Origin: Chlorokybus atmophyticus
Taxonomy: Eukaryota; Plantae; Mesostigma and Chlorokybus algae
Assembly: GCA_009103225.1 (NCBI GenBank)
Contig: RHPI01000385.1
Coordinates: forward strand, 643,479 to 707,478
DNA: 64,000 nt
Reading direction: 5' to 3'
This document shows positions 10,184 through 43,197 of the stretch, in pieces; within the stretch, counting starts at the first letter, position 1; each line of letters starts with the position of its first letter. The notes below the pieces were generated by a model. It made no database searches. It worked only from the letters and a program-made list of their open reading frames with translations, and was not told the DNA's origin. The position numbers were made by a program, and so were the translations under genes.

Positions 10184-12275
10184 TGTTGAGAACTAGTGAT
10201 GCGCCTAGTGTGTGTGTATTTGCCTCCTACATAAAAGTGTGCACACACTAAGGACAAGTGCAGCAAGCACGCCAACTATAGAGACAATGTGCGACCCACT
10301 GTATTAAGCAGTATACAGTGTCTTATATACTATGCTACTAAGCACTAGTCAACTCTAGTCAACTCTGGTCAAAGTCAACACTAGTCAACACTAGTCAATG
10401 GTCAAAGTCAACGGTCAAAGTCAAAGTTGACCATGGTTGACCATAACTGCCGTAACTCCCGTAACTCCCGTAACTCTCGTAACTCTCGTAACTCCCGTAA
10501 CTATAAAGGTTAAGCTGATCGTACCAACTACATGTAGGCGCCGCCTATACATGTACTTTCAACAAGCTATAACATTTAACACTCCCACGCGAGCAGCTTG
10601 ACCTTGAACTCCAAGTTCTTCTCGCAAGCTTACCCACATTAACTTACTCCATTGAACACTCCCACGGATCTGTTGCTCCCACGGACTTGATGCTTATCTC
10701 CATGACACCATCTTTCTCCTCATGCTGCCACCAGGATTACAAGGTTTCAATACTCCTTGTTTCCTCCTCATAGTTGTCGCATTAGGTTCCACAACGCCAC
10801 GCCTGACCTTGCTCAGGTGGTTTCGAGGACTCCCTCAATGGCAAACTATGCTATAAACTACACTGAGTTTTCTACCTTAGCAATGCTGTACCAGAGTGTA
10901 GGCCGTGCAAGGGTTGATCAGACCCTTCTACCAAGGAAGCACCCCTCCCATCTCCTGTTAGCTATACAACTTAGTCCTTGCATGCTAATCAAGTGAAGTG
11001 TTCCAACTAGTACCGCACACCTGTGTGCTACCAAAAAACAACTCCACAGCAATGCAACCTCTAGTGTATGCAGCTCAACACCAGCAACTACTCATAGGCT
11101 AGCAGTAACTCTCACAGACCTTTGTGTCTGCGACCTCCGTCTGCGCATGTCCTTCACGCGCCCTTGCAGTGGGAGAGAACGGACGGACACCATCCACTGC
11201 AACTCCTTGAGGTCCTCACCAATGCTAGAAAGCAATCGCCATCGTGGCGTGCTCCTCCTTGGTTGCCTCATCGTGGATCCTCTTTTGGCACTCGCGAATG
11301 AAGTGGCCCTTCATCTTGCAATAGTGACACTCTTTGTCACGTGATGGCTTCCCACCACCTGCTTTGCTCCTGCTTCGTGTGTGTTGAGAAGATGAGGCAG
11401 AAAATGCAATAGGTTCTCCACCATTCTCTATCTCCTGAACATCCAATTTGCCTTCCACAGCTAGCAGCTTAGGCACTACATCAGCAAACTTTAAAACCAC
11501 ATCTGAGGACTCCAACACAGTCACTAGCGTAGCAAAGCTCTTTCCTAAGCCAGCTAAGACTGCCCACATCACCTCCTCTTCCTTCACATCGTGGCCCACT
11601 GCTGCAAGGTCTTGCCAAAGCTCCCTTGCACGCGAGATGTACTTCTGGATTGGCTCTTTGTGCTCCATCTTCAGAAGTGTCAGCTTGCGTCTCAGCTGCA
11701 ACTTGCGCGAGTTGCTGTTGGCCTTGAAGAGGGTGTCGAAGACCTCCCACGCCTCACGTCCAGTCTTGCAATCCGCAATAAGAGGGAGATGGAAGTCTTT
11801 GACGTGCAAGCCTATCAGCGCAAAAGCTGATTGTGAGTTCTCTGTCCAGGTACCAGTGTCACCTGTTCTTGGCCGCAATGATGTGGAGGAAGTGGGATCG
11901 ACAAAACTCCAGAGCTTCTTGCGGATCAGCACCAACTTCATCTTCAGCGACCATGAAGCGTAGTTGTGCAGATCAAGGGACTCGATGGGCATCCTGTCTG
12001 TGTCAGCCATTGCTTGCTACACAATAGTACAACTCACCCTCTCCCCAAGAACACTCTACTAGTAGGCGCCTATGCTCAACACTCTCTCTCACTAGCACAA
12101 GCGATCACACAAGCGAGTGTGGGCCCATAACCTGTTGAGAACTAGTGATGCGCCTAGTGTGTGTGTATTTGCCTCCTACATACAAGTGTGCACACACTAA
12201 GGACAAGTGCAGCAAGCACGCCAACTATAGAGACAATGTGCGACCCACTGTATTAAGCAGTATACAGTGTCTTAT
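10184..12275 (-). mobile_element. Copia family A copy 2: truncated 5' LTR (12133-12275), PBS, intact gag, non-coding spacer, 3' LTR (10184-10581)
   Basis: LTR end CTCAACA followed by PBS GGTTATGGGCCCA (12120-12132); 261-aa gag; ~640 bp between the gag stop and 3' LTR with no INT, RT or RNase H motifs. Confidence 0.92.
11225..12010 (-). CDS. Intact copia gag (261 aa; DUF4219-like NYASWS..MK, UBN2-like region, CCHC zinc knuckle)
   Basis: LDLHNYASWSLKMKLVLIRKKLW; EAWEVFDTLF; RKLTLLKM...PIQKYISR; CHYCKMKGHFIREC. Confidence 0.92.
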   Translation of the reverse strand: MADTDRMPIESLDLHNYASWSLKMKLVLIRKKLWSFVDPTSSTSLRPRTGDTGTWTENSQSAFALIGLHVKDFHLPLIADCKTGREAWEVFDTLFKANSNSRKLQLRRKLTLLKMEHKEPIQKYISRARELWQDLAAVGHDVKEEEVMWAVLAGLGKSFATLVTVLESSDVVLKFADVVPKLLAVEGKLDVQEIENGGEPIAFSASSSQHTRSRSKAGGGKPSRDKECHYCKMKGHFIRECQKRIHDEATKEEHATMAIAF

Positions 12276-22000: not shown

Positions 22001-23937
22001 GGATGATGAGTTTATTTTTACCACGCAAGCTGTCACGGTTTACATCCAGATGCCTTTCAAATGCCTTTTTGATATGATTTTAAATCATTATTAATTGTAT
22101 ATGGTTCAGAGGAATCATCTTCTTTATATGAAAGTATGTGATGAGTTGCGATTTCGGAGTATGACATATTTGAAACAACTACTTGATAGCAGCGCATACA
22201 GAGTGGGAAAATGTTAAAGAAGCAAAGCTCCTACTGTACATGAGATTGAATATCCAAACAAAAATAACTTATTATCATCGTAACCGATTTCCTATAAACT
22301 TTGCAATGGCCATTGTGGGACCGCTTGGCGCCATCGCAATTTACGATACCGACAAACGGTGTTTGTAGTTGCGCAACGTCAAAATCGAATTGCAAGACAT
22401 GTTAATGACGAAAATTGCGTGATAGATGCGTGACACAAAAATGCGGCATTCACAGAAGGAGCATTGCAATTGTGATTACGTTGAATACGGCATATAGTAT
22501 TCATACACCATGTCTCGCAGGAGCAACTTATAAATGTCTCGTGATGAGTCGACACCGATTGCCTTGGAAGCCACTTGCGCACGACTTTAAATCATTTAGA
22601 AGTCTGCAAACGACGCACCATGGTTCGCTGCGAGCTTCCTCCGTTGCGCAATGTCGTAAAGCTCCGTCTCTCCGTCTCTCGCGGCCTCGCTTGTCGCATG
22701 CGTGTCCCCATGGCCCGCCACGTGCTCAACATGCAAGTCATGGCATGACAGTGGTAGGCCAGTCCCTTACGAAGAAGCGCTGTGCCGTAGGCCTGTCTGG
22801 CCTGTGGTGGCGCCAGCCGGTACCACTGCCCAACGCAGCGTGCGCCGCCGCCCTACTAGTGACCAACGTCACCCAAGTAGGGTCATCGCCGCAGAGCACA
22901 ACAGCAGCCTGTCCAGAAAGTGCGCCTGGGTCCAGCCGAACCCGGCTTTAACACGAGGTTGTCGTCAAACCTCGAACTCAACACAGCTTGAAAAAGCGCA
23001 CAACAGCGCAGACGCCCCGACCGAACCGCGCTTTTGCGCGTGACTCCGGCCCTCCCCTCGCTTGGAAGTCCCCATCGGATGGCTTTCATTGGTTCGCAGG
23101 CCCCCGCAGGCGTGGAGAGGACGGTTGCCGTACGGGGCATGCTGAGTGCGAGAGATCTTATCGGATCGTCCACCACCCTGGACATGGCGTTACCGACGAC
23201 GGCTCCGTTGGCGCACCGTCGCCTTGCGCCGGAGAGCGCTTCAGGCCTAACCTTACTGTTCCGTCGCCGGGTGTCACCCTTTCGGACGCTTGCGCGGCAG
23301 CAAGCACAGTTGCCCCCTGCATTGCATGCACCCATGCACGGAGGCATGCGTGGACGCGGCACGCACCCTTCGTCCTCTAGCATGCATCCAGCCCTGTAGT
23401 TCGCCGCCAGCACCACCGACACGTCATCAGCGACTTTTGCAGACGCCCAGCGTCAGGCCGGCAGCACTCAGTGGTGGCAGCGGCAGTGCATCCGTCTGAC
23501 AGCCGGGACGGGGCTCACGCGGGCAGCGCCTGATCCACACATGCTCGTACCGGCAGCAGCGCGACCGGGTTGTGATAGGCCTGTAGCACTGGCGAGTGCA
23601 GTCTACCGCCATTGACAGGTCGCCCTGGTCAGTGCGAACAGTGATCGGCAATAGAGACAGACGGTTGCTTGCCGACCCTTCTGCATCGGCTTGGGGGCAG
23701 CTTCTAGCGGTAAGGATGCTACTGAGCCCGCTTGCTTGCCCAACACACAGAGCCTGAGAGTTGCTTGTGCACCATGCAAGCATTGTGTTGGCATCACTGC
23801 ACATGCTTCATGCACGTATGGCATGTTGCAATTGTCTACCATTCGCATTTTCCTGGATCTTGAAACAACGTGGTTGTGCAGAGCAGCGGTGCATCATCCT
23901 ACCAATGCAGGCGAAGCACTGTGCCATCCAATCAGCA

Positions 23938-26874
23938 ATGCGGGCGCTGCATCTCTGCCTGCTGGGGTTGGTGCTGGCCGTCATCACGTCCTCGCAGCTC
24001 CAGCTGGCAGCCGCACAGCAGCCACCCAGCAGCGACTTTGCCCGTGCGCTGGACACACTGCGGCCCGGCCACCCGCGCTGTGCGGTCACAACAGACACGC
24101 TACCAGGTACGCAAGGCAGGAACGGTTGGCATCTGTGTGGCCCCGGCCAGTGCCACTTAATACTGTTAGTCGTGGTCATAGGTGCAGCTGAAACTGAGTA
24201 TGATGATTTGGTTGTTGCAGGGATCCAGGCGTACAACAACGCGAAGAACACGATGTGGCCCCTCGTCCTGAGCGCCATGCAAAAGGCCAACGCCACCATC
24301 AAACTGCCGCGCCCTTCCAGGTCAGTGGCAGCAGCAGCAACTTCACTGTCAATGGCAGTGGCTAGTCTCGTGTGCAGGCTCGCTGATATGCGCTTGTCTT
24401 GTGGTTGGCTGCAGCTGCACCGCGCGGTGTTTTGCGGACACCGTGGCGAGCGTGGCGGGAGGCTTCCTTGTGGACCGCGACCCCTTCAAGCTGGCTCGCG
24501 CGCGCAGCGACGTGTTGTACGTGGCCTCCCTGCCTGCGTGGAGCGCGACGTTCCTCAAGGGCGAGGCGTACCTGGACGTGAGCAACTACCTGCTGGCGGT
24601 GTCGTGGGGCTACGACTGGTTGTACGACAGCCTCAGCGCAGCCGACCGCGACGCCCTCTGGAACGCGGTGTCCACCAAGGCCTTCCTCCCCGCCCTCAAC
24701 GCGGCCATGATGCGCGCGGTGGCCGCCCAGGAAACCAACGTGGGGGTGAACGCGATGACGGGCTTCGTGGTGGCGGCGCTGGCGTTTGCGGAGCGCAACA
24801 CCACGCTGTGCGGGCAGATCCTGGCGCTGGCCCTCCCCGCCATTGGAAAGCAGGTCCAGGTGCTCAGTCCCAGCGGCGCCTTCTTCGAGGGACCCTTCTA
24901 CGGCAGCTACATTGGATACAACCTGCCCCTTGCACTCAGCGCCCTCAAGACTGCCCTCAACGGCAACGACTACGGGTGGAGCAACAACCCCGCGCTGATG
25001 GCGTCCGCGTACTTCCGCATCCAATCCCTCAGCCCCACTGTGCAGCCGTTCGCGTTCGCCGACGGGGACTGCCAGGCCCTCTCCATGCAGCTCAGCTTCT
25101 ACGCCGCCGCGCAGACCAGCGACATGTACGTGGTCTCCAACGAGTTCAACCTCAAGCTGACGGGCCTCTTCTTCCGCGTGTTCTGGACAAGACCTGCCTC
25201 TTTCATCAAAGTGCTCCCGCCCAACCCTCTCCCCCTGGACGTGCGCCACGCGGGGTATGAGGTGGAGACGGTGTTCTTGCGCACCGCATGGGACAACCCG
25301 CTCGCCGCGTACCTGGCCGTGAAGGGTGGGTCCAACCCTGGACCCCAGGAAAGCAATCACGCCCACCTCGACCTCGGGTCCTTTGAGTTCGAAAACGACG
25401 GCGCGAGGTGGTTCGTGGACCTGGGATACGACAGCTACACACTCAAAAACTACTTCACGCCAGGACTCAAGTACCGTTACAGGTGAGAGAGCGAGAGAGA
25501 GTGACTCACCCACCGCAACCTTGCAACTGCTGCTGGTGTATGTATGAATGTCCAGCTGATTATGTACTACTACTACGCAGCTACTACCGCACGCGCACGG
25601 AGTCGCACAACACGCTGGCTGTGCGCAGCAACGCGACGCAGTCCCCGATCTTGTGCGGCAACCAGGCGCTGGGCGCGACCGCCACGCTGTCGTCTCCGTT
25701 CTCCTCACTGCTGCGCTCGCACACTATCGTCGACCTCACGCAGGCGTACGCGCACGAGGGCGCGTTGAGCGTGTGTCGCGGCCTGGCGCTGCTCAAGGAC
25801 GTGGCGGCCCCGCAGGCGCGCCTCCTCGTGCAGGACGAGCTGTCTTTCATACGACCCACGGACATCGTGAGCATGTTCCACACGCGCGCCACGTCCGTGA
25901 CCATCTCCGTCACGTCGGATGGCCGCCCCATGGTCCTGCTCCAGCAGGGTCGCTCCCAGCTGCAGGGCGTCATCCTCAGCCCCGACGACGCCTACTTCGA
26001 CGTCTTCGCCACGGACCCGGCCGTCGCGGGCAGGGCGGGCGAGAACCCCAACACGGGCGTCACCAACCTGGTGGTGCGCCTGCCCACCCTGCGCACCGAC
26101 GCCACCATCGCCGTGCGCTGGTCCAACCCGCTCAACGATGCCCCGCCCCCGCCCCCGCCAGTGCCGAGCNNNNNNNNNNNNNNNNNNNNNNNNNNNNNNN
26201 NNNNNNNNNNNNNNNNNNNNNNNNNNNNNNNNNNNNNNNNNNNNNNNNNNNNNNNNNNNNNNNNNNNNNNNNNNNNNNNNNNNNNNNNNNNNNNNNNNNN
26301 NNNNNNNNNNNNNNNNNNNNNNNNNNNNNNNNNNNNNNNNNNNNNNNNNNNNNNNNNNNNNNNNNNNNNNNNNNNNNNNNNNNNNNNNNNNNNNNNNNNN
26401 NNNNNNNNNNNNNNNNNNNNNNNNNNNNNNNNNNNNNNNNNNNNNNNNNNNNNNNNNNNNNNNNNNNNNNNNNNNNNNNNNNNNNNNNNNNNNNNNNNNN
26501 NNNNNNNNNNNNNNNNNNNNNNNNNNNNNNNNNNNNNNNNNNNNCCGCCACCAGTGGCGGGCATGCCGCCGCCCTCGGATGCACCGCACCCTCCCCCTCC
26601 CCCTCCAACGCCAGTGCAGGAAGTGTCACCGCCCGCAGACGCACCACCCTCGGCTGCACCACTCGCTGCGCCGCCACCACTGGACGGCGTGCCACCGCTG
26701 CTGGCGGATGCACCGCCGCCTTTCTGTGTGTGTGTGCCGCCACTGCAGGGAGTGCTGCCCTCGCACTCGGATGCACCCCCGACCTCAGCCGCATTCGCCC
26801 AGAGCCAGGAGATGGCATGGATGGCACGGCTCATCTCTCCAACTGCACTACAGCCGCTTTCAGACTGGCAGTAG
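23938..26874 (+). CDS. Secreted heparinase II/III-family polysaccharide lyase-like protein with Pro-rich C-terminal insert; exons 23938-24106, 24221-24320, 24415-25482, 25581-26874
   Basis: Hydrophobic N-terminus MRALHLCLLGLVLAVITSSQLQLAAA; PGHPR; GAFFEGPFYGSY; KGGSN...NHAHLDLGSFEFENDGARWFVDLGYDSY; YYRTRTESHNTL. The three GT-AG introns join in frame (876 aa, counting 125 N-codons). Confidence 0.85.
26170..26544. other. Assembly gap (375 N) inside a poly-Pro coding stretch
   Basis: Run of N flanked by CCC/CCG-rich sequence. Confidence 1.
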
Positions 26875-27709: not shown

Positions 27710-30700
27710 CTACTGATGCTTGTTATTGGATGCAGCGGGCGTGGGCGTGGGTGAGGTGGGCGGTTTCAAGCCTGGGTAGCGCGTGTAGGGCGACAGCGGG
27801 GTCGGGCTCGGGGGCAGGTTCGTCGAGTCTGAGGGGGTCCATTGCCGTTGTTGCTGCGGGGCGGCTGAGCTCTCCACCTTGCCGTTCCCACCCTGCGATG
27901 ACTTTGACGCGGGGGGTGTTCGGGCCGCTTCCACTACCTCGCGCGCCACGTCTTGCGCCTTCTCTGCCACTTTCGCAACCCTGACACACAGACACACAGA
28001 GCATGTTCAGCGCATCCAAACATTGGTCAGCTGCATCAACGGTGCGCCCACTTTGTACTACAACTACTCACTTGGGCTTGGCGGCCTCAACAACCTCCTC
28101 CACGTCCTCCACAACATCCTGCGCGGGCTTCCACTGCCACGGCCACTGCCACCTGCACGCCAGCACACAATATGCTTGTCACCCTGTATGTGACAACACC
28201 CCAGCACAAGCACACCATGCTAAGTTAGTGTAGAGTGGCATACCCGTCCGCCTGAGCAGCTGCCTTCTTGACGGTGCGTGTCGCCTGATCTACTGTATCC
28301 ATCACCGCGTCCTGCGCTTGCTTGACGTCCACCTTCTGCACGACCTCCTGCGCAGCCTCCTGAACCTTGCTTACCACCTGCTTGGCCTTCTTCTGTACGT
28401 CCTTGGGCGCGACTTCCTGTACCTTGCTCACCACCTGCTCACCCTTCTTCTGCATGTCCTTGGGCGAGACCTCCTGCACCTTGCTGACGACCTCCTCGGT
28501 CTTCTTCTGCACGTCCTTGGACGAGACCTCCTGCACCTTGCTAGCGACCTCCTCAGCCTTCTTCTGCATATCCTTGGGCGCAACCTCCTGCACCTTGCTT
28601 GCCACCTCCTCGGCCTTCTTCTGCACATCCTTTGGCACGACCTCCTGCACCTTGCTCACCACCTCCTCAGCCTTCTTCTGCAACTCCTTGGGCGCGGGGG
28701 GAGACGGCGGTGCTTGCTGCTGGCTGGTGACTGAGCTCGCGGGCGTGGGCGTCGGGGATGTGGGCGGCTTCAGGCCAGGGTACCGCGCGTATCTGTGCTT
28801 GCAAATAGAGAGCAAGAGGTAAGCGTGCGCAAATGCATTCTATCGACTTGTGTCATGCTTTGACAGGGGACGCAATAATGACACGCTGGGATGTATGCAC
28901 ATGTCTTACGGTGAGAGTGGTGTTGGGCTGGGGGGCAAGTCTGTTGATGACTTGCGTGTGGGTTGGGCAGTTGTTGTTGATGCGCTGTCCGTCGTGGATG
29001 CCACCGCGCTGGTGCGGCGCTGCCATGGCCACGAGAACCTGCATAGTTCATCCAAGCTATGAGCAACCGCACACAACCCTGCCGCACAAGTCACCATGGC
29101 AATCAGCTATGACGTATCTCACCCAATGCTCTCCTCCTCCTGCTGCTCGGCCTGCTCCGGTTTCTTGCTACTCTCCTGCTGCAGCGCAGCCTGTAACAAT
29201 AGGGTGAGTGCCACATTACACAACTGCGCACTTGCATATGCACGCCGATCCCGATGGGCTTCTTACCTGTACAACAGCTCGACGCTTGGCCTCAGCCTCT
29301 AATAAACGCAAAAGAAACGACACAGGTTGAGTAACTCATGTTACAGAGTGTACAATAGATAACAGCATCTGATCACCACAAGGGGATGTTCACCTTCAGC
29401 CTGCTTCTTGGCCTTGGCCTCAGCTTCCTGCTTCGCCTTGGCTTCAGCCTGCTGCCTTGCCTTGGCCTCAGATTCTTGCTTCGACTTGGCCTCGGCCTCC
29501 TGCTTAGCCTTGGCCTCAGCCGCTGCCTTGGCCTCAGTCTCCTTCCTGGCCTGCTCCTCGTCCTTAGCCTTCTTGGCCTGGGCCTCGGCGTCAATCTTGG
29601 CCTTGGCCTCAGTGTCCTTGCGGCGCTTCTCTTCCTCCTGAGCCTTCACCTGACCGTGAAGATGTTACAAACACGTGTCGTGTAGCTAGCTATTTAATTT
29701 GTAGGTGGCCAACACCTGCCCTTGACCAGCTCACACCAGAAAACCCAACAAACACACCAACACCACACAGGCTCACCTGGCGTGTCATATCAACAGCGGG
29801 TGTCTTCTTCGCCACCACCTGCGGCTTCTTCTCCTCCTCCTCTGGCTCCTCCTCCTCCTCTTCCGGCTCTGCAAGGGCAGCCTCGCGCTCCTGACGGGTC
29901 AACCTGCGGGGAGCAAGAAGCAACCAACGAGCCTCAGCACGCTCAAGGTGTCAGGTACTCAGAGAAACATTTGCACACAATGCTGCAGGACTTACATTCG
30001 GCCCTTGCGTCTGGCGGCGTCGGCGGCATTGGCGAGGCGAGCGGCGGCAGCCTCCTCGCGCTCAAGGCGGTCAGCGCGCTCCTGCGCAGCCTCCACGGCT
30101 TCGCGGGCAGCCGCCGCGGCAGCCTCGAGGCGGCTGGCCTGGTCCTCGGCACTGGCCAGGGCGGTGCGGTAGGCGGCCGCCAGGCGGGCACGCTCGGCAG
30201 CCAGCACGGCGGCCTCCTCCGCGGCCTCCTCGGCAGCCTTGCGCTCGCGCTCCGCCTGCTGTCGCGCCGCGGCGGCCTCGCGCTCAGCCTTGCGCGGGTC
30301 CACAGCGGGCTTCTGCACGGCCTTCGGGGCAGCTTCCTGTGCCTGAGCAAGGGCTTGCTGCGGCTGGGCAGCCTTGATGGACGGCCTGCAGATACCTCAT
30401 GTTGCAGTATGGGTCTCACTCAAGCATTGCACAAGTGCACACACACACACCACCACATGTGCTTACCTGGGCGTTGCCCGTGCAGCTGGAGCGGGAGGCG
30501 CCTCCTCCTCATCGACGTAGAATGTGGCCTCCTGCTTTGGTGCACCGCCACCGAGAAGCCCGCCCAGCAGCGACTTGACTGCAGGCTTTGCAGGCACCGC
30601 CTCTTCCTCATCCTCTTCTTCCTCATCCTCCTCTTCCTTGACCTGTTACACGTGACACTGCAATAGTAACACAACTATTTCCCCGCTAATGACCAAAGTC

Positions 30701-33673
30701 TCCACATTCAACAACTCCATGACACCTACCTTGCGGCCGCCTAGGAGACCGCCAAGGAGTCCTCGGGGGCGTGGAGGCGCGACCTCCTCCTCTTCTTCCT
30801 CCTCCTCTTCCTCCTCCACCCTGCGTCCTCCGCCAAACAGGCCGCCCAGGCCCAGCTTGGGGGCGGGCTTGGGTTGCTCCTGCACTGGAGCGGGTCGTCC
30901 CCCACGCTTGTTGCTGGCGGGCGTGGCAGGGGCAGCGGGCTGCTGGAGCGCACCAAAGATGCCGCCGCGACGCACAGGAGGCTCCTCCTCCTCCTCCTCT
31001 TCCTCCTCCTGTGACTTACATACATGAGCACGCGCTCAAATGGAAGCGGGTGATGACACCACTCAGTGCATGCACACCAACCTGTTTGCGGCCGAAAAGG
31101 CCAAAGAGTGGCCGCCGAGGGGCCTCCTCCTCTTCGTCATCCTCATAATCATCCTCATCCTGCACACGGCGCCCCAGCCCAAAGAACTTTGGCTTGGGCG
31201 CAGGCGGCGGGGGCGCCGCCCCCCTCGCAGGTGCTTTTCCCCGTCCCTTCACAGCGGCCGCAGCCTTGGCTGCCTTCGCCCTGGCTTCAGCCTCTGCCTT
31301 GGCATTAGCGTCGGCAACAGCCTTGGCCTTGGCGCGTGCCTCCGCCTCCGCCTTGGCCTTGGCTTCGGCAATGGCCCTTGCCTTGGCGCGCACCTCGGCC
31401 TCCGCCTTGGCCTTAGCCTCGGCCTCTGCACGGTTCTTAGCCTCGACCTCGGCACGGGCGCGGGCCTGCGCCTCCTCCTGCTCCGCCCTGGCCTCTGCCT
31501 CGGCGTCAGCCTCGGCGTCAGCCTCGGCCTGTCGGCGTGCGAGGAGCTCGCGCCGGGCCTGCGTGAGGCCGCGGTGGGGCTCAATGTCCAGGAGGAGGTC
31601 GGCGAGGGGGCGCAGGGGAGCAGCGGGGTCCGCCACCACCTCCAGGTACTTGTTCTCGGCCAGCTCAGGGGAGGAGAGGACGGTGGACACCACCTGCGCC
31701 ACCTGCACCGCCGCCACGTTGCCGCCGTTGGCCGCGTCCTTGCGCAGAAGACGCAGGTTGGATGACGACGCAAATGAGTCAGACACCTTCTCCGTCGCAC
31801 CGGGACGCACGATCTGAGTAAAGCAAGCAGTCAAGAGGGTGGGTGCGCATGCAGCACTGTGCACCAACGATAGCAATCCTCCATATGCACAATCGAACTC
31901 ACCGTGAACTCGATGCCACTGTCAACAAGCGCGTCCTCTACCTTTGCGTACGCGCTCTTGCCGCCCCCAAACAGGCTGCAGACGCACCGTATCAACAAAA
32001 TTACTACATGCCTGGAGTGGTAACAGTGAGCTGAGCATTTTGAGCAGTCTACTGTTGGTAACTGACTTGAGGAAGCCTCCCTTGGAAGCGCCCTGCATGG
32101 AGATGAGCACAAACTGCTCCACGCCCGCTTCGGCAGCGGCTTCGACGAGGGCGACGGCGTCGGCAGGGTTGGTGGCGCCGGTGCCGAGCACGCAAACCAC
32201 GCGCGAGGCGCCGCCCATGGCGGAGGCTATGGCGCGCTCGTCGGCATAGTCCACGGGCGCCAGCGACAGCGCGTTGAGGCGCGCAGATGGCAGAAGCTCC
32301 AGCTTGCGGATGAGCTCGAAGAACTCCTGCGCGCCTTCCACGTCCTCCACCGCCGCCTGCACACGGAAACCCTCGCCCAACAGCTCGCGCACGATGCGCG
32401 CGCCCACGCGGCTCGTCGCGCCCGTCACAACCACACTGCTGCCGCTAGGGACACCGCCTCCGCCGCCGCCCGCCCCGCCCCCAACCAGCGTGGCAATGGG
32501 ACCGCCACTCCCCTTTGGCGTGCCTGTTGTAACAACATGGCCGCACAAGCAGAATGAGTGAGCAACCCCAACGAACCACCAACAGCCAAGCATGCTTACT
32601 TTTTGAACCGTGCATGCAGGTCGGACTTGAGAGCCATTACAGACAATGCAGTGATAATGACTTCAGTGAGCGATCAACCTGTATTAATTGCTGCGTGAAC
32701 TACTTGCAGCACTACACATATGTGTTATTGACTGACAGCAAGCTGACCACATTAGTGAAATCAACATGCCGCAAGAAGCTTGGAATGACTCCGTTCTTTC
32801 TGTCCTGGGTGCATGTAGTACAGAAACCCAGTTGCCAGCCTCTTCACCAATTCTCTGTGAATCGCGCAAGTCCAAGCAAAAGTGTGTTGCACACACGTCC
32901 TTATATGTGCCGGCATCCCAACAAGCAATCGACTGACTTGCCAGTGGGCATGTGTTGTGCTCTCTAGTCATGCGTGTCTAGCACTCTGCACTGTCGTGAT
33001 CTGTTGTACGTAGGTGGCGAGCATATCATACTTGCAAAGGTCAGCGTGGCCATAATTAGTCTTTCCTCCACTAAACTGCATGGCTTGAGCCATGCATACA
33101 CCAATGTGCACCGCAAGAACCCATCGACCAAACTGTGCACCGCCATTATCATTCACCATGCATGTTCTTGCGGCGGATGAGTGTGTAACCCACTGTTTGT
33201 CTGGGTGGTAGCAGTTCTCCGTTGACCGCATACCAGTCCACGCCCTAAGCACGTGCATGCTTGGGACAACAGGTGTTCCACTCGCAACTCCGCGATGGGG
33301 CATCATGTGGTGCGACCCACTCCTTCAATGCGATGTGGATGGTACTCTATGTGTGTGCTACAATGCATGCGCTGTTTGCTTGGCGTTTCAGTATCCTATC
33401 CATGGTTGATGTTAGCGTGTGTGCAATGCTCTGCGCGGACGTGCATACACCTGTGAGGATGGCGCTGGTAGGACCCAGCGAGCGGCTACGCGTGGAGGAA
33501 GCTGTCAGCGAGCGTGATACGGGTAGAGGCTCTCCCAACAGCGACGGCGCCGCAACCCGCCTGCCCGACAGCTGCGGCCGGCGCCGCTGCCCATTGGCGT
33601 CACGCCCGCTCGCGCAGGGAGCGGACAGCGCCGACGCCGAAGCTACTCTAAGGGACGACGTGGCTGACGCCAT
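27710..33673 (-). CDS. PTAC16: PTAC16/TIC62-family plastid NAD(P)-binding Rossmann protein, 15 exons, 1280 aa by hand splicing, with coiled-coil and acidic repeats and two TIC62/TROL-type FNR-binding motifs
   Basis: Exons 33673-33451, 32523-32067, 31975-31903, 31813-31082, 31008-30730, 30642-30467, 30385-29996, 29903-29777, 29649-29394, 29298-29267, 29190-29123, 29038-28910, 28792-28244, 28152-28072, 27980-27710; all GT-AG, phases consistent. Ser/Ala/Arg transit peptide; VVVTGATSRVGARIVRELL; IVRPG; AENKYLEVVADPAAPLRP; GGLLGG..KQEATFYVDEEE; PLSPY(A/T)RYPGLKPPTSP x2. The symbol indicates closest family, not proven orthology. Confidence 0.85.
28350..28690 (-). repeat. Coding tandem repeat, 57 bp / 19 aa x6 (KDVQKKAEEVASKVQEVAP)
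   Basis: CCTTGGGCG recurs at 28401 and 28458 (period 57); six units visible in the translation. Confidence 0.95.
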
Positions 33674-41118: not shown

Positions 41119-42630
41119 ATGAGGCGGCGTAACCCCAGCAATGCCTGCGAGGCGTGCGAGCGTAACCCCGCCGCCGTCTACTGCAAGGTAAGGCATATGC
41201 CACACCCATATTTCCTTTCAACGGCAGCGGCAAGCCCGCTAGCGTTGTGCTAGTTCTTTGCGGCCTAGTCCTTCTGTTTGGGCAGCTCGCTATGCCACAA
41301 AAACATAACCAAATCCTGCTGGACGCATACACACGTATGCGCATACTGGATGTATGTGGAGGGCAGCCTGCCAGGAATTGCTCAAGTGCTAGTTAGCTGT
41401 CCATGTGGCAGGACTTCCACGTCCTGTCGATAGCCGTCCCTGTGCAGTTAGGTGGCTGGGACGGCCGTGTCTTGCTGCTGGGTTGATATTGCTAGGTACC
41501 CATGTCGACAGCTAGCAGCCCAGTAGACTCATGGCAGCAGCTCGGCTGGTGTGCCTCCCCAGCTTGCCGGTCATTTGAGCACGTTGCATGCCTGCACTAA
41601 CGGAATGACTACTTGCCTTTCTCACTGACGTTTCATGGCATGTTTCAGGCGGATTCTGCGTATCTGTGCCTGCTGTGCGACTCCTCCATCCATGCAGCGA
41701 ATAAGCTCGCTTCCCGGCATGAGCGTGTGCTGTGCAAGGTCAGTGTGCACAACATCTTGGCACACACAGCAGTCTCGTCATTATCTGCCATAGCAACTTA
41801 CCTTCGCTGCTCAGTCGGACTTCACTGCCGAGCTGCGCGACGCCATGCTGGAGTCAATGGAGGCCCAGTGGTTGCAGCAGACAGACACACCAGACATCAA
41901 GCCTTGCACCTCAAACGATCTCAACTTCTCAGTCGGGGAGCTGGAGTCGATGCTTGACATGAAACCCGAATCACCGGTTCCACTGGCTTACACCAATGCC
42001 AGCACAAGTGGGCGCAAAGGTGAGACTGGCTCTTTACGAGATGCTAATTGCTGTGTGTCCCGGTTGTAAACATCAGCTTGCTAATAGTTGAACACTGGAA
42101 ATCGCAGAGTGTTTGCACCAACTTCAAGAGGCCCCGGATGTGATGATGCAAAGGGGGATGTCATGGAAGGACGAGAACATCACCTCCTCAGCCGCGAAGC
42201 TGAGCAGTGGTTCACAGGCTGCAAACAACGAGTTTATTGCTACTCTGCAGGCGTCGGACCAATATCGTAGCCCACGCCCAGCCGTCACCACCAACCAATC
42301 TCTTCAGAACATGTAAGTGGGCAGTAAGTGTAGCAACACCCCCACACCTTCATGCTATGGCTGGATACTGGTACCTGTCGATCTTATCTGCTCACCGAGT
42401 GATTTCGCTTTTGCATCACCTACAGCTGACTCAGTTGCCACTGCAGGCAAGATGAGCTGTCACAAGTCCCCACGAATTTTATGGGCATGTACCAAGTCGT
42501 GCCAACACTCGGGGGTCAAAATGAGGCGTGCATGCAGCGGCCAGGCCAGTCATGCTTTGTGACGGACAGCTCAAGCTGCCAGCTGGGCTCTTTGTCGCCG
42601 CGAGGCAGCGTGTTGGCTGCAGGCGGCAGC

Positions 42631-42676
<46 letters not shown>

Positions 42677-43197
42677 GCAGCTTCTTCAACAGCAACAGCA
42701 ACAGCTACTTTGCCAGCAGCACGAGCGCGTTGCCCAACACTCCCTCGCTACAGCATCATCACCAGCAGCAGCAGCAACAGGCTGCACAGACACAGCTGCA
42801 GGCTCAGTCCGCCCAGCAGCAGCAGCCACAGGCACCACAGCAGCGGCTGGGCAGAAATCCCACAAGAATGGACCCGTTTGAGATGCCGCAGGCGTCTATG
42901 CGCTCCTTCAGCGCCGGAAACCTCAGCATACTGCCTCCTGACTTGGACTACATGTCTATGTTTAGCCAGAGCGCGGAGCAGCAGACGCCAACTGACAAGA
43001 GTCTGGAGTCTCCTCATGACGGCCTCACGCGCAATGATCGGTTGCTGCGTTTCCGCCAGAAGAAGGAGCGACTGAGCTACAAAAAGCTTGTGCGCTACGA
43101 GAGCCGCAAGGTTCTTGCCGATGCGCGCCCGCGTATAAAGGGCCGCTTTGTTAAGATGCACTCGCCGTCCGATGGGCACACACTCCCCGTCCTTTAA
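41119..43197 (+). CDS. CONSTANS-like protein (single B-box plus CCT); exons 41119-41187, 41649-41738, 41815-42019, 42108-42312, 42447-43197
   Basis: CEACERNPAAVYCK/ADSAYLCLLCDSSIHAANKLASRHERV; CCT RNDRLLRFRQKKERLSYKKLVRYESRKVLADARPRIKGRFVK; splice phases consistent. Confidence 0.92.
42631..42675 (+). repeat. (AAC)15 coding microsatellite encoding poly-Asn
   Basis: Direct count, in frame within the COL last exon. Confidence 0.95.

What the first reader, a model, noticed from the sequence alone, without database searches (positions are those of the whole stretch)
27710..33673. One algal protein combines PTAC16 hallmarks with two TIC62/TROL-type FNR-recruiting motifs
Seen: 15 exons splice in phase to 1280 aa. 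After the Rossmann fold come AENKYLEVVADPAAPLRP, an Ala/Glu/Lys coil and GGLLGG..KQEATFYVDEEE. The ORF then runs ~600 aa further and contains STDLPPSPTPLSP/YARYPGLKPPTSPTP (split by intron 28909-28793) and STNLPPSPTPLSPYTRYPGLKPPTSPTP at the C-terminus. Established: Arabidopsis PTAC16 has AENKVVEV..DP.AP.RP and ends FGGLFKQETIYIDDD. TIC62 and TROL tether ferredoxin-NADP+ reductase through Ser/Pro motifs of the form PLSPY..Y.DLKPP.SP.P, which to my recollection were described as vascular-plant features. Inference: FNR membrane tethering may predate land plants, and this gene may resemble the ancestor that split into PTAC16 and TIC62.
Basis: partly seen in the sequence, partly recalled or inferred. 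Interest (0 to 1): 0.85.

Follow-up and report, generated by a model that had tools for sequence, protein, structure and literature searches.

The report
Algal TIC62-type ferredoxin-NADP reductase tether
An alga makes one 1280-residue chloroplast-type protein carrying two copies of the short Ser/Pro motif that flowering plants use to dock ferredoxin-NADP+ reductase, so this docking device, which the literature still calls plant-specific, appears to be far older than land plants.

Summary
On the minus strand, 15 GT-AG exons (33673..27710) splice in phase to 1280 aa. A single spliced 4083-nt contig from one run, and a 1904-nt contig from a second study, join the Rossmann exons to both motif exons.

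Both C-terminal motifs (STDLPPSPTPLSPYARYPGLKPPTSPTPTPA and STNLPPSPTPLSPYTRYPGLKPPTSPTPTPA) match the TIC62 FNR-binding repeat:
- The only PDB hit of the last exon is the TIC62 peptide of 3MHP.
- A profile of 295 vascular-plant motif instances scores 24.4 bits on each copy, against 9.2 for the best of 20,000 shuffles.
- The two copies differ at 18 of 31 codons synonymously and at only 2 non-synonymously.

The PTAC16/TIC62 split predates this gene, because both clades hold chlorophytes and streptophytes. The "PTAC16 hallmarks" are ancestral to the whole family. Two intron positions and the WPWQ-plus-motif modules place the gene in the streptophyte TIC62 lineage, with a fast-evolving Rossmann domain.

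The motif also occurs in TIC62 of Closterium, liverworts, Sphagnum, lycophytes and ferns. I found no paper saying so. FNR binding is untested, and the organism (probably Chlorokybus, from other agents' notes) is not proven here.

The parts
27710..33673 (-). Coding region of the gene: 15 exons, 1280 aa. Exons, high to low: 33673-33451, 32523-32067, 31975-31903, 31813-31082, 31008-30730, 30642-30467, 30385-29996, 29903-29777, 29649-29394, 29298-29267, 29190-29123, 29038-28910, 28792-28244, 28152-28072, 27980-27710.
   Evidence: All introns are GT-AG and the frame is open. A spliced 4083-nt contig in run X1 and a 1904-nt contig in run X2 cover it. CDS GC is 67% and GC3 77%, against 49% in introns.
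33451..33673 (-). Exon 1: N-terminal presequence of about 75 aa that looks like a chloroplast transit peptide.
   Evidence: Composition is Ser 21%, Ala 16%, Arg 13%, with 10 basic and 2 acidic residues. An in-frame stop lies 12 nt upstream of the ATG. No targeting predictor was available.
31577..32449 (-). NAD(P)-binding Rossmann domain (aa ~100-330) with a variant glycine loop TGATSRVG. It lacks the TIC62 E-R-P-x-D signature.
   Evidence: Pfam NAD_binding_10 at 9.2e-14 and NmrA at 1.9e-12 on exon 2. Alignment to PTAC16 and TIC62 relatives.
31976..32066 (-). Intron 2, phase 2, inside the Asn codon of L-N-L-F.
   Evidence: Same position and phase in TIC62 of Closterium, Calypogeia, Diphasiastrum and Buddleja. 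Absent from 2 PTAC16 genes and 4 chlorophyte homologues. RNA joint 31975|32067.
31814..31902 (-). Intron 3, phase 0, directly before I-V-R-P-G.
   Evidence: Same position and phase in the four streptophyte TIC62 genes and in none of the six other genes. RNA joint 31813|31903.
31610..31663 (-). LAENKYLEVVADPAAPLR string at the end of the Rossmann domain.
   Evidence: Compare AENKVVEVYTDPSAPLRP in Malus PTAC16. xNK-V-L/V-E-V..AE..AP also occurs in TIC62-side proteins.
31232..31576 (-). First Ala/Glu/Lys/Arg-rich stretch (aa 331-445), a presumed coiled-coil spacer.
   Evidence: Ala 41%, Glu 17%, Arg 12%, Lys 11%. DNA repeats of 24-54 nt. A 12-nt unit at 31497-31528 varies in copy number in run X1.
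30502..31186 (-). GLFG-type short hydrophobic repeats, each followed by an acidic run (aa 461-635; I count six by eye). The last is LLGGLLGGGAPKQEATFYVDEEE (30502-30570).
   Evidence: A regex caught four of them. The others are visible in the translation. The same module ends angiosperm PTAC16 and lies internally in chlorophyte relatives of both clades.
29131..30468 (-). Second Ala/Glu/Lys/Gln-rich stretch (aa 647-935).
   Evidence: Ala 30%, Glu 20%, Lys 11%. No Pfam family on exons 7 and 9.
29020..29037 (-). FSWPWQ module 1.
   Evidence: F-x-W-P-W-Q/E precedes FNR motifs in TIC62 of Closterium, P0118, Calypogeia, Selaginella, Diphasiastrum and ferns. It also occurs without FNR motifs in chlorophyte relatives P0018 and P0054.
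28738..28947 (-). FNR-binding-type motif 1, STDLPPSPTPLSP|YARYPGLKPPTSPTPTPA (aa 969-999), split by the phase-2 intron 28793-28909.
   Evidence: Vascular-plant motif HMM scores 24.4 bits. RNA joint 28792|28910 is unambiguous.
28330..28686 (-). 6.4 tandem copies of a 19-aa unit (KDVQKKAEEVVSKVQEVxP).
   Evidence: TRF period 57 nt, 6.4 copies, 84% matches. Translation.
28131..28245 (-). GWQWPWQW module 2, split by intron 28153-28243.
   Evidence: RNA joint 28150|28242 (cut +2), seen in three runs.
27734..27826 (-). FNR-binding-type motif 2, STNLPPSPTPLSPYTRYPGLKPPTSPTPTPA (aa 1243-1273), 7 residues before the stop.
   Evidence: The only PDB hit of exon 15 is the TIC62 peptide 3mhp_C, E 0.0013. 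HMM scores 24.4 bits. Against motif 1 it shows 18 synonymous and 2 non-synonymous codon differences.

Best explanation
The gene encodes a chloroplast-targeted scaffold of the PTAC16/TIC62 family, and belongs to the streptophyte TIC62 lineage.

Domain order:
- a transit-peptide-like presequence;
- a diverged NAD(P)-binding Rossmann domain;
- Ala/Glu/Lys spacers;
- a family-ancestral block of GLFG-plus-acidic repeats ending in FYVDEEE;
- two composite C-terminal modules, each a WPWQ element followed by a Ser/Pro motif of the TIC62/TROL type.

Proposed mechanism (inferred, not shown). Each Ser/Pro motif adopts a polyproline-II helix and docks ferredoxin-NADP+ reductase, as the pea TIC62 peptide does in PDB 3MHP. 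One molecule would then hold FNR at two sites. From my memory of 3MHP each site clamps an FNR dimer, but I did not check the stoichiometry here. The protein has no hydrophobic segment, so it would tether FNR through its other modules as a peripheral, not an integral, membrane protein. Binding would probably be stronger at low stromal pH, as reported for plants.

Shown here: the gene model, the single transcript, the motif match, purifying selection on both motif copies, and shared introns and modules with TIC62. Inferred: plastid location, FNR binding and its regulation.
For: - Gene model and transcript.
- Rossmann domain.
- Motif identity. The PDB search returns only the TIC62 peptide. The pattern of Balsera 2007 is met at all fixed positions except D/E to G. 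The same YPGLKPP variant occurs in liverwort TIC62. A profile of 295 vascular-plant instances gives 24.4 bits on each copy, against a maximum of 9.2 in 20,000 shuffles.
- Selection: the two copies are 29/31 identical in protein but differ at 20 of 93 bases, with 18 codons changed synonymously and 2 non-synonymously.
- Conservation: the extended string KSSTDLPPSPTPLSPY..YP.LKPPTSPTP is nearly identical in Closterium TIC62.
- Lineage. Two Rossmann introns are shared in position and phase with 4 of 4 streptophyte TIC62 genes and 0 of 6 other family genes. WPWQ-plus-motif modules occur only on the TIC62 side.
- No TM segment: the highest 19-residue hydropathy is 1.48, inside the Rossmann fold.
- PPII helix and low-pH binding in plants: introduction of the preprint read.
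Against: - No binding, localisation or FNR sequence of this organism was examined.
- The Rossmann tree puts the window next to the PTAC16-side clade (98/90), not inside TIC62. It lacks the TIC62 E-R-P-x-D signature and has Ser in place of the second Gly of the nucleotide loop.
- The acidic residue before LKPP, present in all 295 vascular-plant instances' consensus, is Gly here.
- Chlamydomonas uses a different tether, an Lhca4 helix, so algae need not use this motif.
- A Chlorokybus TIC62-side protein (P0007) already exists. If the window is Chlorokybus, this gene is a second paralogue of uncertain role.
Confidence: 0.68

Rival explanations
1. The gene is the PTAC16-lineage orthologue of this alga. 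It would be a nucleoid/thylakoid anchor that still carries FNR motifs and WPWQ modules inherited from the common ancestor of PTAC16 and TIC62. This is essentially the first reader's reading.
For: - The ML tree of the Rossmann domain groups the window with the PTAC16-side clade at 98/90.
- The window lacks ERPxD and the SE..GPYRIDG loop, as PTAC16-side proteins do, and has GGF-LNLFGGG like clade-A chlorophytes.
- It carries AENK..DP.AP.RP and the FYVDEEE module.
- No Chlorokybus protein sits in the PTAC16 clade among the 150 representatives.
- AU does not reject window plus streptophyte PTAC16 (p 0.126).
Against: - None of the four conserved PTAC16 introns is present, while two TIC62-specific introns are.
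- No PTAC16-side protein examined has a WPW module or an FNR motif: 0 of 120 angiosperm PTAC16, and none in Mesostigma, Chara, Coleochaete, Spirogloea or Closterium PTAC16.
- This reading needs several independent losses of the motif.
- The window branch is long (1.05). AU equally fails to reject placement with TIC62 (p 0.101) or as sister of Chlorokybus P0007 (p 0.15).
Confidence: 0.15
2. The Ser/Pro strings are conserved for a reason other than FNR docking in this alga. They could be proline-directed phosphorylation sites or a ligand for another partner. FNR binding would then have been recruited later, in land plants.
For: - The motif is rich in S/T-P sites.
- The acidic residue before LKPP is replaced by Gly.
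- A different FNR tether is described in green algae.
- Some bryophyte TIC62 proteins (Ceratodon, Riccia) keep WPWQ modules but have no motif, so the modules can work without it.
Against: - The core PLSPY..Y..LKPP.SP.P is the part of the pea peptide that aligns in 3MHP.
- It is conserved from this alga through Closterium and liverworts to angiosperms.
- Both copies are under purifying selection. The simplest reading is one conserved partner.
Confidence: 0.15
3. The long ORF is an artefact: two neighbouring genes (a Rossmann gene and a Pro-rich gene) joined by the reader's splicing, or by a chimeric contig.
For: The tool warns that a contig across two genes does not prove one transcript, and that the RNA nature of the runs is a guess.
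Against: - Contigs with all 14 introns precisely removed at GT-AG sites can only come from spliced RNA.
- One open frame runs through all 15 exons.
- Two independent studies give the same joints.
- Closterium, P0118, liverwort, lycophyte and fern proteins have the same Rossmann-to-motif architecture.
Confidence: 0.02

Closest known systems
TIC62 (Arabidopsis At3g18890; pea Tic62, peptide in PDB 3MHP)
   Same: - N-terminal NAD(P)-binding Rossmann domain of the same family.
- C-terminal repeats of the FNR-binding Ser/Pro motif.
- Two Rossmann intron positions.
- WPWQ modules, as in non-seed-plant and Closterium TIC62.
- No transmembrane segment.
   Different: - 1280 aa against roughly 520-650 aa in angiosperms.
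- The Rossmann domain is strongly diverged: no E-R-P-x-D signature, a shorter loop, and Ser in the glycine loop.
- It keeps the GLFG/acidic repeats ending in FYVDEEE, which land-plant TIC62 lacks.
- Gly replaces Asp/Glu before LKPP.
- The motif intron lies 3 codons upstream in copy 1 and is absent in copy 2.
PTAC16 (Arabidopsis At3g46780 and its angiosperm orthologues such as Malus P0070)
   Same: - Rossmann domain followed by AENK..E...DP.AP.RP.
- An Ala/Glu/Lys coil.
- A GGL(F/L)..QE..Y(I/V)D(D/E)(D/E) element.
- On the Rossmann tree the window sits nearest this side.
   Different: - PTAC16 ends at the YIDDD element, whereas here about 645 more residues follow.
- PTAC16 has no WPWQ and no FNR motif (0 of 120).
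- None of its four conserved introns is present in the window.
TROL (thylakoid rhodanese-like protein, Arabidopsis At4g01050)
   Same: It carries the same type of C-terminal FNR-binding motif, according to the literature read.
   Different: TROL is an integral membrane protein with a rhodanese domain. The window protein has no rhodanese match in Pfam and no hydrophobic segment.
Closterium sp. Naga37s-1 CAI5521849.1 (P0084) and EukProt transcript P0118
   Same: Closest in architecture: presequence, Rossmann domain, xNK string, AEAKAK coils, and repeated [F-x-WPWQ ... (K)SSTD(L/F)PPSPTPLSPY..Y..LKPPTSPTP] modules.
   Different: - They keep the canonical TIC62 Rossmann domain with ERPxD.
- They lack the FYVDEEE module and the 19-aa repeats.
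- Each Closterium motif is split by the TIC62-type intron after SPYT. P0118 is a transcript, so its gene structure was not examined.
- Both are unannotated proteins with no paper I could find.

Membership tests
TIC62 (Balsera group I) | C-terminal FNR-binding repeat S-P-Y-x2-Y-x-[DE]-L-K-P-P-[STA]-[ST]-P-[ST]-P | tested here: met
   Two copies match every fixed position except [DE] to G. The G variant also occurs in Calypogeia TIC62. PDB hit to the TIC62 peptide. HMM scores 24.4 bits on each copy.
TIC62 (Balsera group I) | Rossmann-domain signature E-R-P/A-T-D-x-Ar-K/G-E-T-H | tested here: not met
   The window reads GATEKVSDSFASSSN where TIC62 has GMERPTDSFKETHN. The signature is quoted.
TIC62 (Balsera group I) | Rossmann domain branches inside the TIC62 clade | tested here: inconclusive
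   ML places it next to the PTAC16-side clade (98/90). AU does not reject TIC62 placement (p 0.101) or sister position to Chlorokybus P0007 (p 0.15).
TIC62 (Balsera group I) | Lineage-specific intron positions (phase 2 in the Asn codon of LNLF; phase 0 before IVRPG) | tested here: met
   Shared with Closterium, Calypogeia, Diphasiastrum and Buddleja TIC62. Absent in 2 PTAC16 and 4 chlorophyte genes. This criterion is mine, not a published definition.
TIC62 (Balsera group I) | Binds FNR and sits at the thylakoid or inner envelope | not testable with these tools
   Needs biochemistry and localisation.
PTAC16 | AENK-V-V-E-V..(D/S/N)P.AP.(R/K)(P/S) after the Rossmann fold | tested here: met
   AENKYLEVVADPAAPLRP against AENKVVEVYTDPSAPLRP and similar strings. 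The string is not exclusive to PTAC16: xNK-V-L-E-V-V-A-E..AP occurs on the TIC62 side.
PTAC16 | Protein ends with GGLF.QET.Y.D(D/E)(D/E) | tested here: not met
   The element is present (LLGGGAPKQEATFYVDEEE) but internal at aa 617-635, with 645 residues after it. 114 of 120 angiosperm PTAC16 end with it.
PTAC16 | Conserved PTAC16 introns (after KYK; before VAKSQ; after AENK; phase 2 in LF^S) | tested here: not met
   All four are shared by Closterium and Malus PTAC16 and absent from the window.
PTAC16 | Association with the plastid nucleoid or transcriptionally active chromosome | not testable with these tools
   Known for Arabidopsis from the review read.
TROL | Rhodanese-like domain and transmembrane helices | tested here: not met
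   No rhodanese family in Pfam scans of the seven largest exons. Maximum 19-residue hydropathy is 1.48.

The most novel reading that the evidence does not exclude
The polyproline FNR-docking motif arose at or before the base of the streptophytes. It arose in a large scaffold that also carried the GLFG/YIDE module, which today marks the nucleoid-thylakoid protein PTAC16. If so, one ancestral protein coupled FNR docking to whatever the PTAC16-type module anchors. Land plants later divided these tasks between TIC62/TROL and PTAC16. This alga would then offer a living example in which both functions can be tested in one molecule, and FNR tethering by this route would be an ancestral streptophyte trait lost or replaced in chlorophytes.
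Probability: 0.3. Interest if true: 0.75.

Novelty: new variant of a known kind. Interest (0 to 1): 0.62.

Why it matters
How FNR is positioned at the membrane is held to steer electrons between linear and cyclic flow. The field's working picture has three parts:
- Cyanobacteria use a CpcD-like FNR domain.
- Plants use TIC62 and TROL.
- Green algae use something else, recently proposed to be an Lhca4 helix. A 2026 preprint still calls the plant route plant-specific, and the founding evolutionary paper calls the motif a recent vascular-plant acquisition.

This gene, together with the Closterium, liverwort and Sphagnum sequences found on the way, shows the motif under selection in algae and non-vascular plants. 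That moves its origin back by hundreds of millions of years. It also recasts the lack of the motif in Physcomitrella reported by Balsera 2007, like the motif-less Ceratodon and Riccia proteins found here, as probable secondary loss.

The question becomes directly testable with peptides and recombinant FNR. The result further shows that modules now split between PTAC16 and TIC62 coexisted in one protein.

Tried and rejected
- **Motif-directed word search.** I searched with Closterium residues 749-800. It gave only 3 hits and missed P0118 and the window protein. That tool's blank therefore says nothing about distribution.
- **Profile search A1**. Only the best 120 of 531 hits were listed, nearly all land-plant TIC62. 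Algal and chlorophyte long homologues below that cut were not seen.
- **Organism identity.** Exact look-ups of a CCT-motif ORF of the window and of Chlorokybus P0007 found nothing. I could not prove the organism. "Chlorokybus" rests on other agents' notes plus circumstantial fit. The fit is that the highest Rossmann identity is to Chlorokybus P0007, there is no Chlorokybus protein in the PTAC16 clade, and about 1398 windows in the scan implies roughly 90 Mb if they are 64 kb each, against a published 85 Mb.
- **ESM Atlas look-alike search** of the motif: no usable hit.
- **Rossmann phylogeny** as arbiter of PTAC16 versus TIC62 placement. ML and AU disagree in strength and three constraints were all unrejected. 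I therefore turned to intron positions.
- **A shared intron inside the FNR motif.** TIC62 genes split every motif in phase 2 after SPY[TSI]. The window's copy 1 is split in phase 2 three codons upstream and copy 2 is not split. This is suggestive of sliding but is not a shared character.
- **Literature searches** for "FNR-MRM/ITEP" and for TIC62 with bryophyte terms returned noise. The stricter searches found no paper describing the motif outside vascular plants.
- **Long antisense ORFs** (for example 29722-30666 +) are by-products of the biased GC-rich repeats, not genes.
Full report
**Observation.** The region was read on the minus strand. I derived 15 exons by hand and checked them by script. 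All 14 introns are GT..AG. The exons sum to 3843 nt and translate without a stop into 1280 aa. An in-frame TGA lies 12 nt upstream of the ATG at 33673. Coding GC is 67% (GC3 77%) against 49% in introns. Introns are 73-127 nt except the first, which is 927 nt.

**Transcript.** One search for sequencing runs gave three holders from two studies. Laying them showed one 4083-nt contig in X1 with pieces on all exons. Twelve joints are listed, all with CT..AC ends on the + strand, which is GT..AG for this gene.

The two joints not listed flank repeats that the tool skips. The contig has exactly 455 nt between exon 7 and exon 4, which equals exon 6 (176) plus exon 5 (279). The other gaps in the contig equal exons 3, 10 and 11.

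The contig runs about 18 nt beyond the ATG and about 230 nt beyond the stop. X2, from another study, has a 1904-nt contig from the 3' UTR to exon 7 with identical joints.

Intron-free contigs can only derive from spliced RNA. X1 differs from the window by two base changes and an in-frame 12-nt repeat unit.

**What the parts are.**
- Exon 2 matches Pfam NAD_binding_10 (9.2e-14) and NmrA. No other large exon matches any family.
- The first 75 residues are Ser/Ala/Arg-rich with 10 basic and 2 acidic residues, as in transit peptides.
- There is no hydrophobic segment.
- After the Rossmann fold come Ala/Glu/Lys-rich stretches. Next are short GLFG-type repeats, each followed by an acidic run, the last being LLGGLLGGGAPKQEATFYVDEEE.
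- A second coil follows.
- The C-terminus then runs: FSWPWQ, motif 1, 6.4 tandem 19-residue units (TRF), GWQWPWQW, motif 2, and the stop seven residues later.

**Are the motifs TIC62-type?** Five lines of evidence say yes.
- A phmmer search of exon 15 against all PDB chains returns one hit, the 26-residue TIC62 peptide of 3MHP (E 0.0013), aligned over PLSPYT.Y..LKPP.SP.PT.
- The published pattern S-P-Y-x2-Y-x-D/E-L-K-P2-S/T/A-S/T-P-S/T-P (Balsera 2007) is met by both copies except for Gly at the D/E position. The chance expectation is 1.7e-13.
- I built an HMM from 295 distinct motif instances of named vascular-plant TIC62 proteins. It scores 24.4 bits on each copy. The best of 20,000 shuffles of the Pro/Ser-rich tail scores 9.2.
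- The two copies are 29/31 identical as protein. Yet 18 codons differ only synonymously and 2 non-synonymously. This is an old duplication kept by selection, not a recent copy.
- The extended string is almost the same in Closterium TIC62: KSSTDLPPSPTPLSPYTMYPDLKPPTSPTPSPP.

**Relatives.** An exhaustive HMMER search with exon 2 found 188 proteins and none above 50% identity. The window protein itself is therefore not in that library. Names were obtained for 30 hits.

The family falls into two clades.
- **PTAC16 side.** It holds streptophyte PTAC16 (Mesostigma, Chara, Coleochaete, Spirogloea, Closterium, and angiosperms confirmed by name). It also holds a chlorophyte subclade (Symbiochloris, Apatococcus, Chromochloris, Chlorella, Trebouxia, Myrmecia, Volvox).
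- **TIC62 side.** It holds chlorophytes (Dunaliella, Haematococcus, Parachlorella, Sanguina, a Chlamydomonas) and streptophyte TIC62 (Chlorokybus P0007, Closterium P0084, P0118, land plants).

The duplication therefore predates the chlorophyte/streptophyte split, and this gene cannot be the unsplit ancestor.

The "PTAC16 hallmarks" are also not exclusive. The xNK-V-L-E-V..AP string and internal G..G..VYIDE modules occur in chlorophyte proteins of the TIC62 side, and GLFG/acidic repeats occur on both sides. None of 120 angiosperm PTAC16 has an FNR motif or a WPW module.

**Where the window gene belongs.** In the careful tree it has a long branch (1.05) and sits next to the PTAC16-side clade (98/90). 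Its sequence lacks the TIC62 ERPxD signature and loop.

AU tests reject none of three constraints:
- with streptophyte PTAC16, p 0.126;
- with streptophyte TIC62, p 0.101;
- sister to Chlorokybus P0007, p 0.15.

I therefore fetched ten genomic loci and mapped their introns. The window's two Rossmann introns are phase 2 inside the Asn codon of L-N-L-F and phase 0 before I-V-R-P-G. Both are shared in position and phase with all four streptophyte TIC62 genes: Closterium, Calypogeia, Diphasiastrum and Buddleja. Neither is shared with the two PTAC16 genes or the four chlorophyte genes. The four introns conserved between Closterium and Malus PTAC16 are all absent from the window.

Together with the WPWQ-plus-motif modules, found only on the TIC62 side, this places the gene in the streptophyte TIC62 lineage. 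Its Rossmann domain is fast-evolving, and the tree position is most simply long-branch attraction. I hold this at about 0.7.

**Distribution of the motif.** In my samples it is present in TIC62 of:
- Closterium and P0118, which groups with Closterium;
- the liverwort Calypogeia, including an exact PLSPYTRYPGLKPPTSPTP;
- Sphagnum;
- Selaginella and Diphasiastrum;
- ferns and seed plants.

It is absent in Ceratodon, Riccia and a moss-like short form. It is also absent in every chlorophyte homologue I hold.

The literature states otherwise:
- Balsera 2007 found it only in vascular plants and not in Physcomitrella.
- Mosebach 2017 notes that no orthologues of the tethers are known in Chlamydomonas.
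- A 2026 preprint calls the TIC62/TROL route plant-specific and proposes an Lhca4 helix for green algae.

Searches combining Tic62 with streptophyte or Marchantia found no paper describing the motif outside vascular plants. My library lacks most subscription journals, so "undocumented" is provisional.

**Organism.** I could not prove it. Notes of other agents on other windows of this genome name Chlorokybus. My data are consistent with that:
- the highest Rossmann identity (44%) is to Chlorokybus P0007;
- there is no Chlorokybus protein in the PTAC16 clade;
- one holder run belongs to a 2013-2016 multi-species study;
- the scale of the scan, about 1398 windows, fits the published 85 Mb if the windows are 64 kb each.

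It is in any case an alga, not a vascular plant. The nearest relatives are algal, and the gene has short introns and 77% GC3.

**Mechanism and limits.** From the plant literature and the 3MHP match, each motif should form a polyproline-II helix that docks FNR, with tighter binding at low pH. The protein would then hold FNR at two sites while its other modules provide peripheral attachment. None of this was tested. The Gly at the acidic position, the altered nucleotide loop (TGATSRVG) and the unknown role of the WPWQ and 19-residue repeats are open points.

**Verdict.** This is a real, expressed gene and a new variant of a known kind: a TIC62-family FNR tether. Its value is evolutionary. It also opens a direct experimental test in algae.

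Noticed in passing
window 31497-31528: A 12-nt unit (GCCTCGGCGTCA, 2.7 copies, encoding part of the AEADAEAD run) is one unit shorter in the transcript contig of run X1 than in the window. This is an in-frame copy-number polymorphism between strains or alleles. X1 also shows T>C at 28455 and 31190.
   Followed up: partly
window 29020-29037 and 28131-28245; P0018, P0054, P0084, P0118, P0153, P0277-P0291: A short F-x-W-P-W-Q/E element recurs across the family. In chlorophyte TIC62-side proteins it is followed by an (E/A)A..WI..W(K/R) element. In streptophyte TIC62 it sits 20-80 residues upstream of each FNR motif. It is older than the FNR motif and its function is unknown. I found no description of it.
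   Followed up: partly
L001, L006, L007, L010 (TIC62 genes of Closterium, Buddleja, Calypogeia, Diphasiastrum): Nearly every FNR motif in these genes is split by a phase-2 intron at the same place (SPY[TSI]^x-Y..LKPP); the fourth, degenerate Closterium copy (LRPP) is not. The repeats therefore multiplied as intron-containing DNA units, and the intron is conserved from a zygnematophyte to an angiosperm. The window's motif 1 has a phase-2 intron three codons upstream.
   Followed up: yes
P0284 (Ceratodon), P0289 (Riccia), P0119, versus P0291 (Sphagnum), P0278/P0279 (Calypogeia): Among bryophyte TIC62 proteins some keep FNR motifs and others have only the WPWQ modules. The published absence in Physcomitrella therefore looks like secondary loss rather than the primitive state.
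   Followed up: partly
P0081 (Mesostigma viride PTAC16-side protein): Its GLFG/acidic modules, including GLFGFGGASSVFIEDEEEEE, lie N-terminal of the Rossmann domain instead of C-terminal. This is a module rearrangement within the family. Closterium TIC62 also has one such unit (RFGGLFSPKKKDDEEEE) before the Rossmann fold.
   Followed up: no
window 23761-26874 (+): Long ORFs next to the gene. The ORF at 25408-26871 gives a weak Pfam match to Heparinase II/III C-terminal (E 3.9e-4, below the curated cut-off). This agrees with the separate first-stage note on this window.
   Followed up: no
window 11228-12010 (-) and 42481-43194 (+): A copia-type retrotransposon gag ORF (Retrotran_gag_2, 1.5e-31), and a 238-aa ORF with a C-terminal CCT motif (1.5e-15). 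An exact look-up of the CCT ORF found no identical annotated protein.
   Followed up: partly
window 28333-28696: 6.4 tandem copies of a 57-nt unit encode an amphipathic 19-residue repeat (KDVQKKAEEVVSKVQEVxP) between the two FNR motifs. No homologue examined has it.
   Followed up: no
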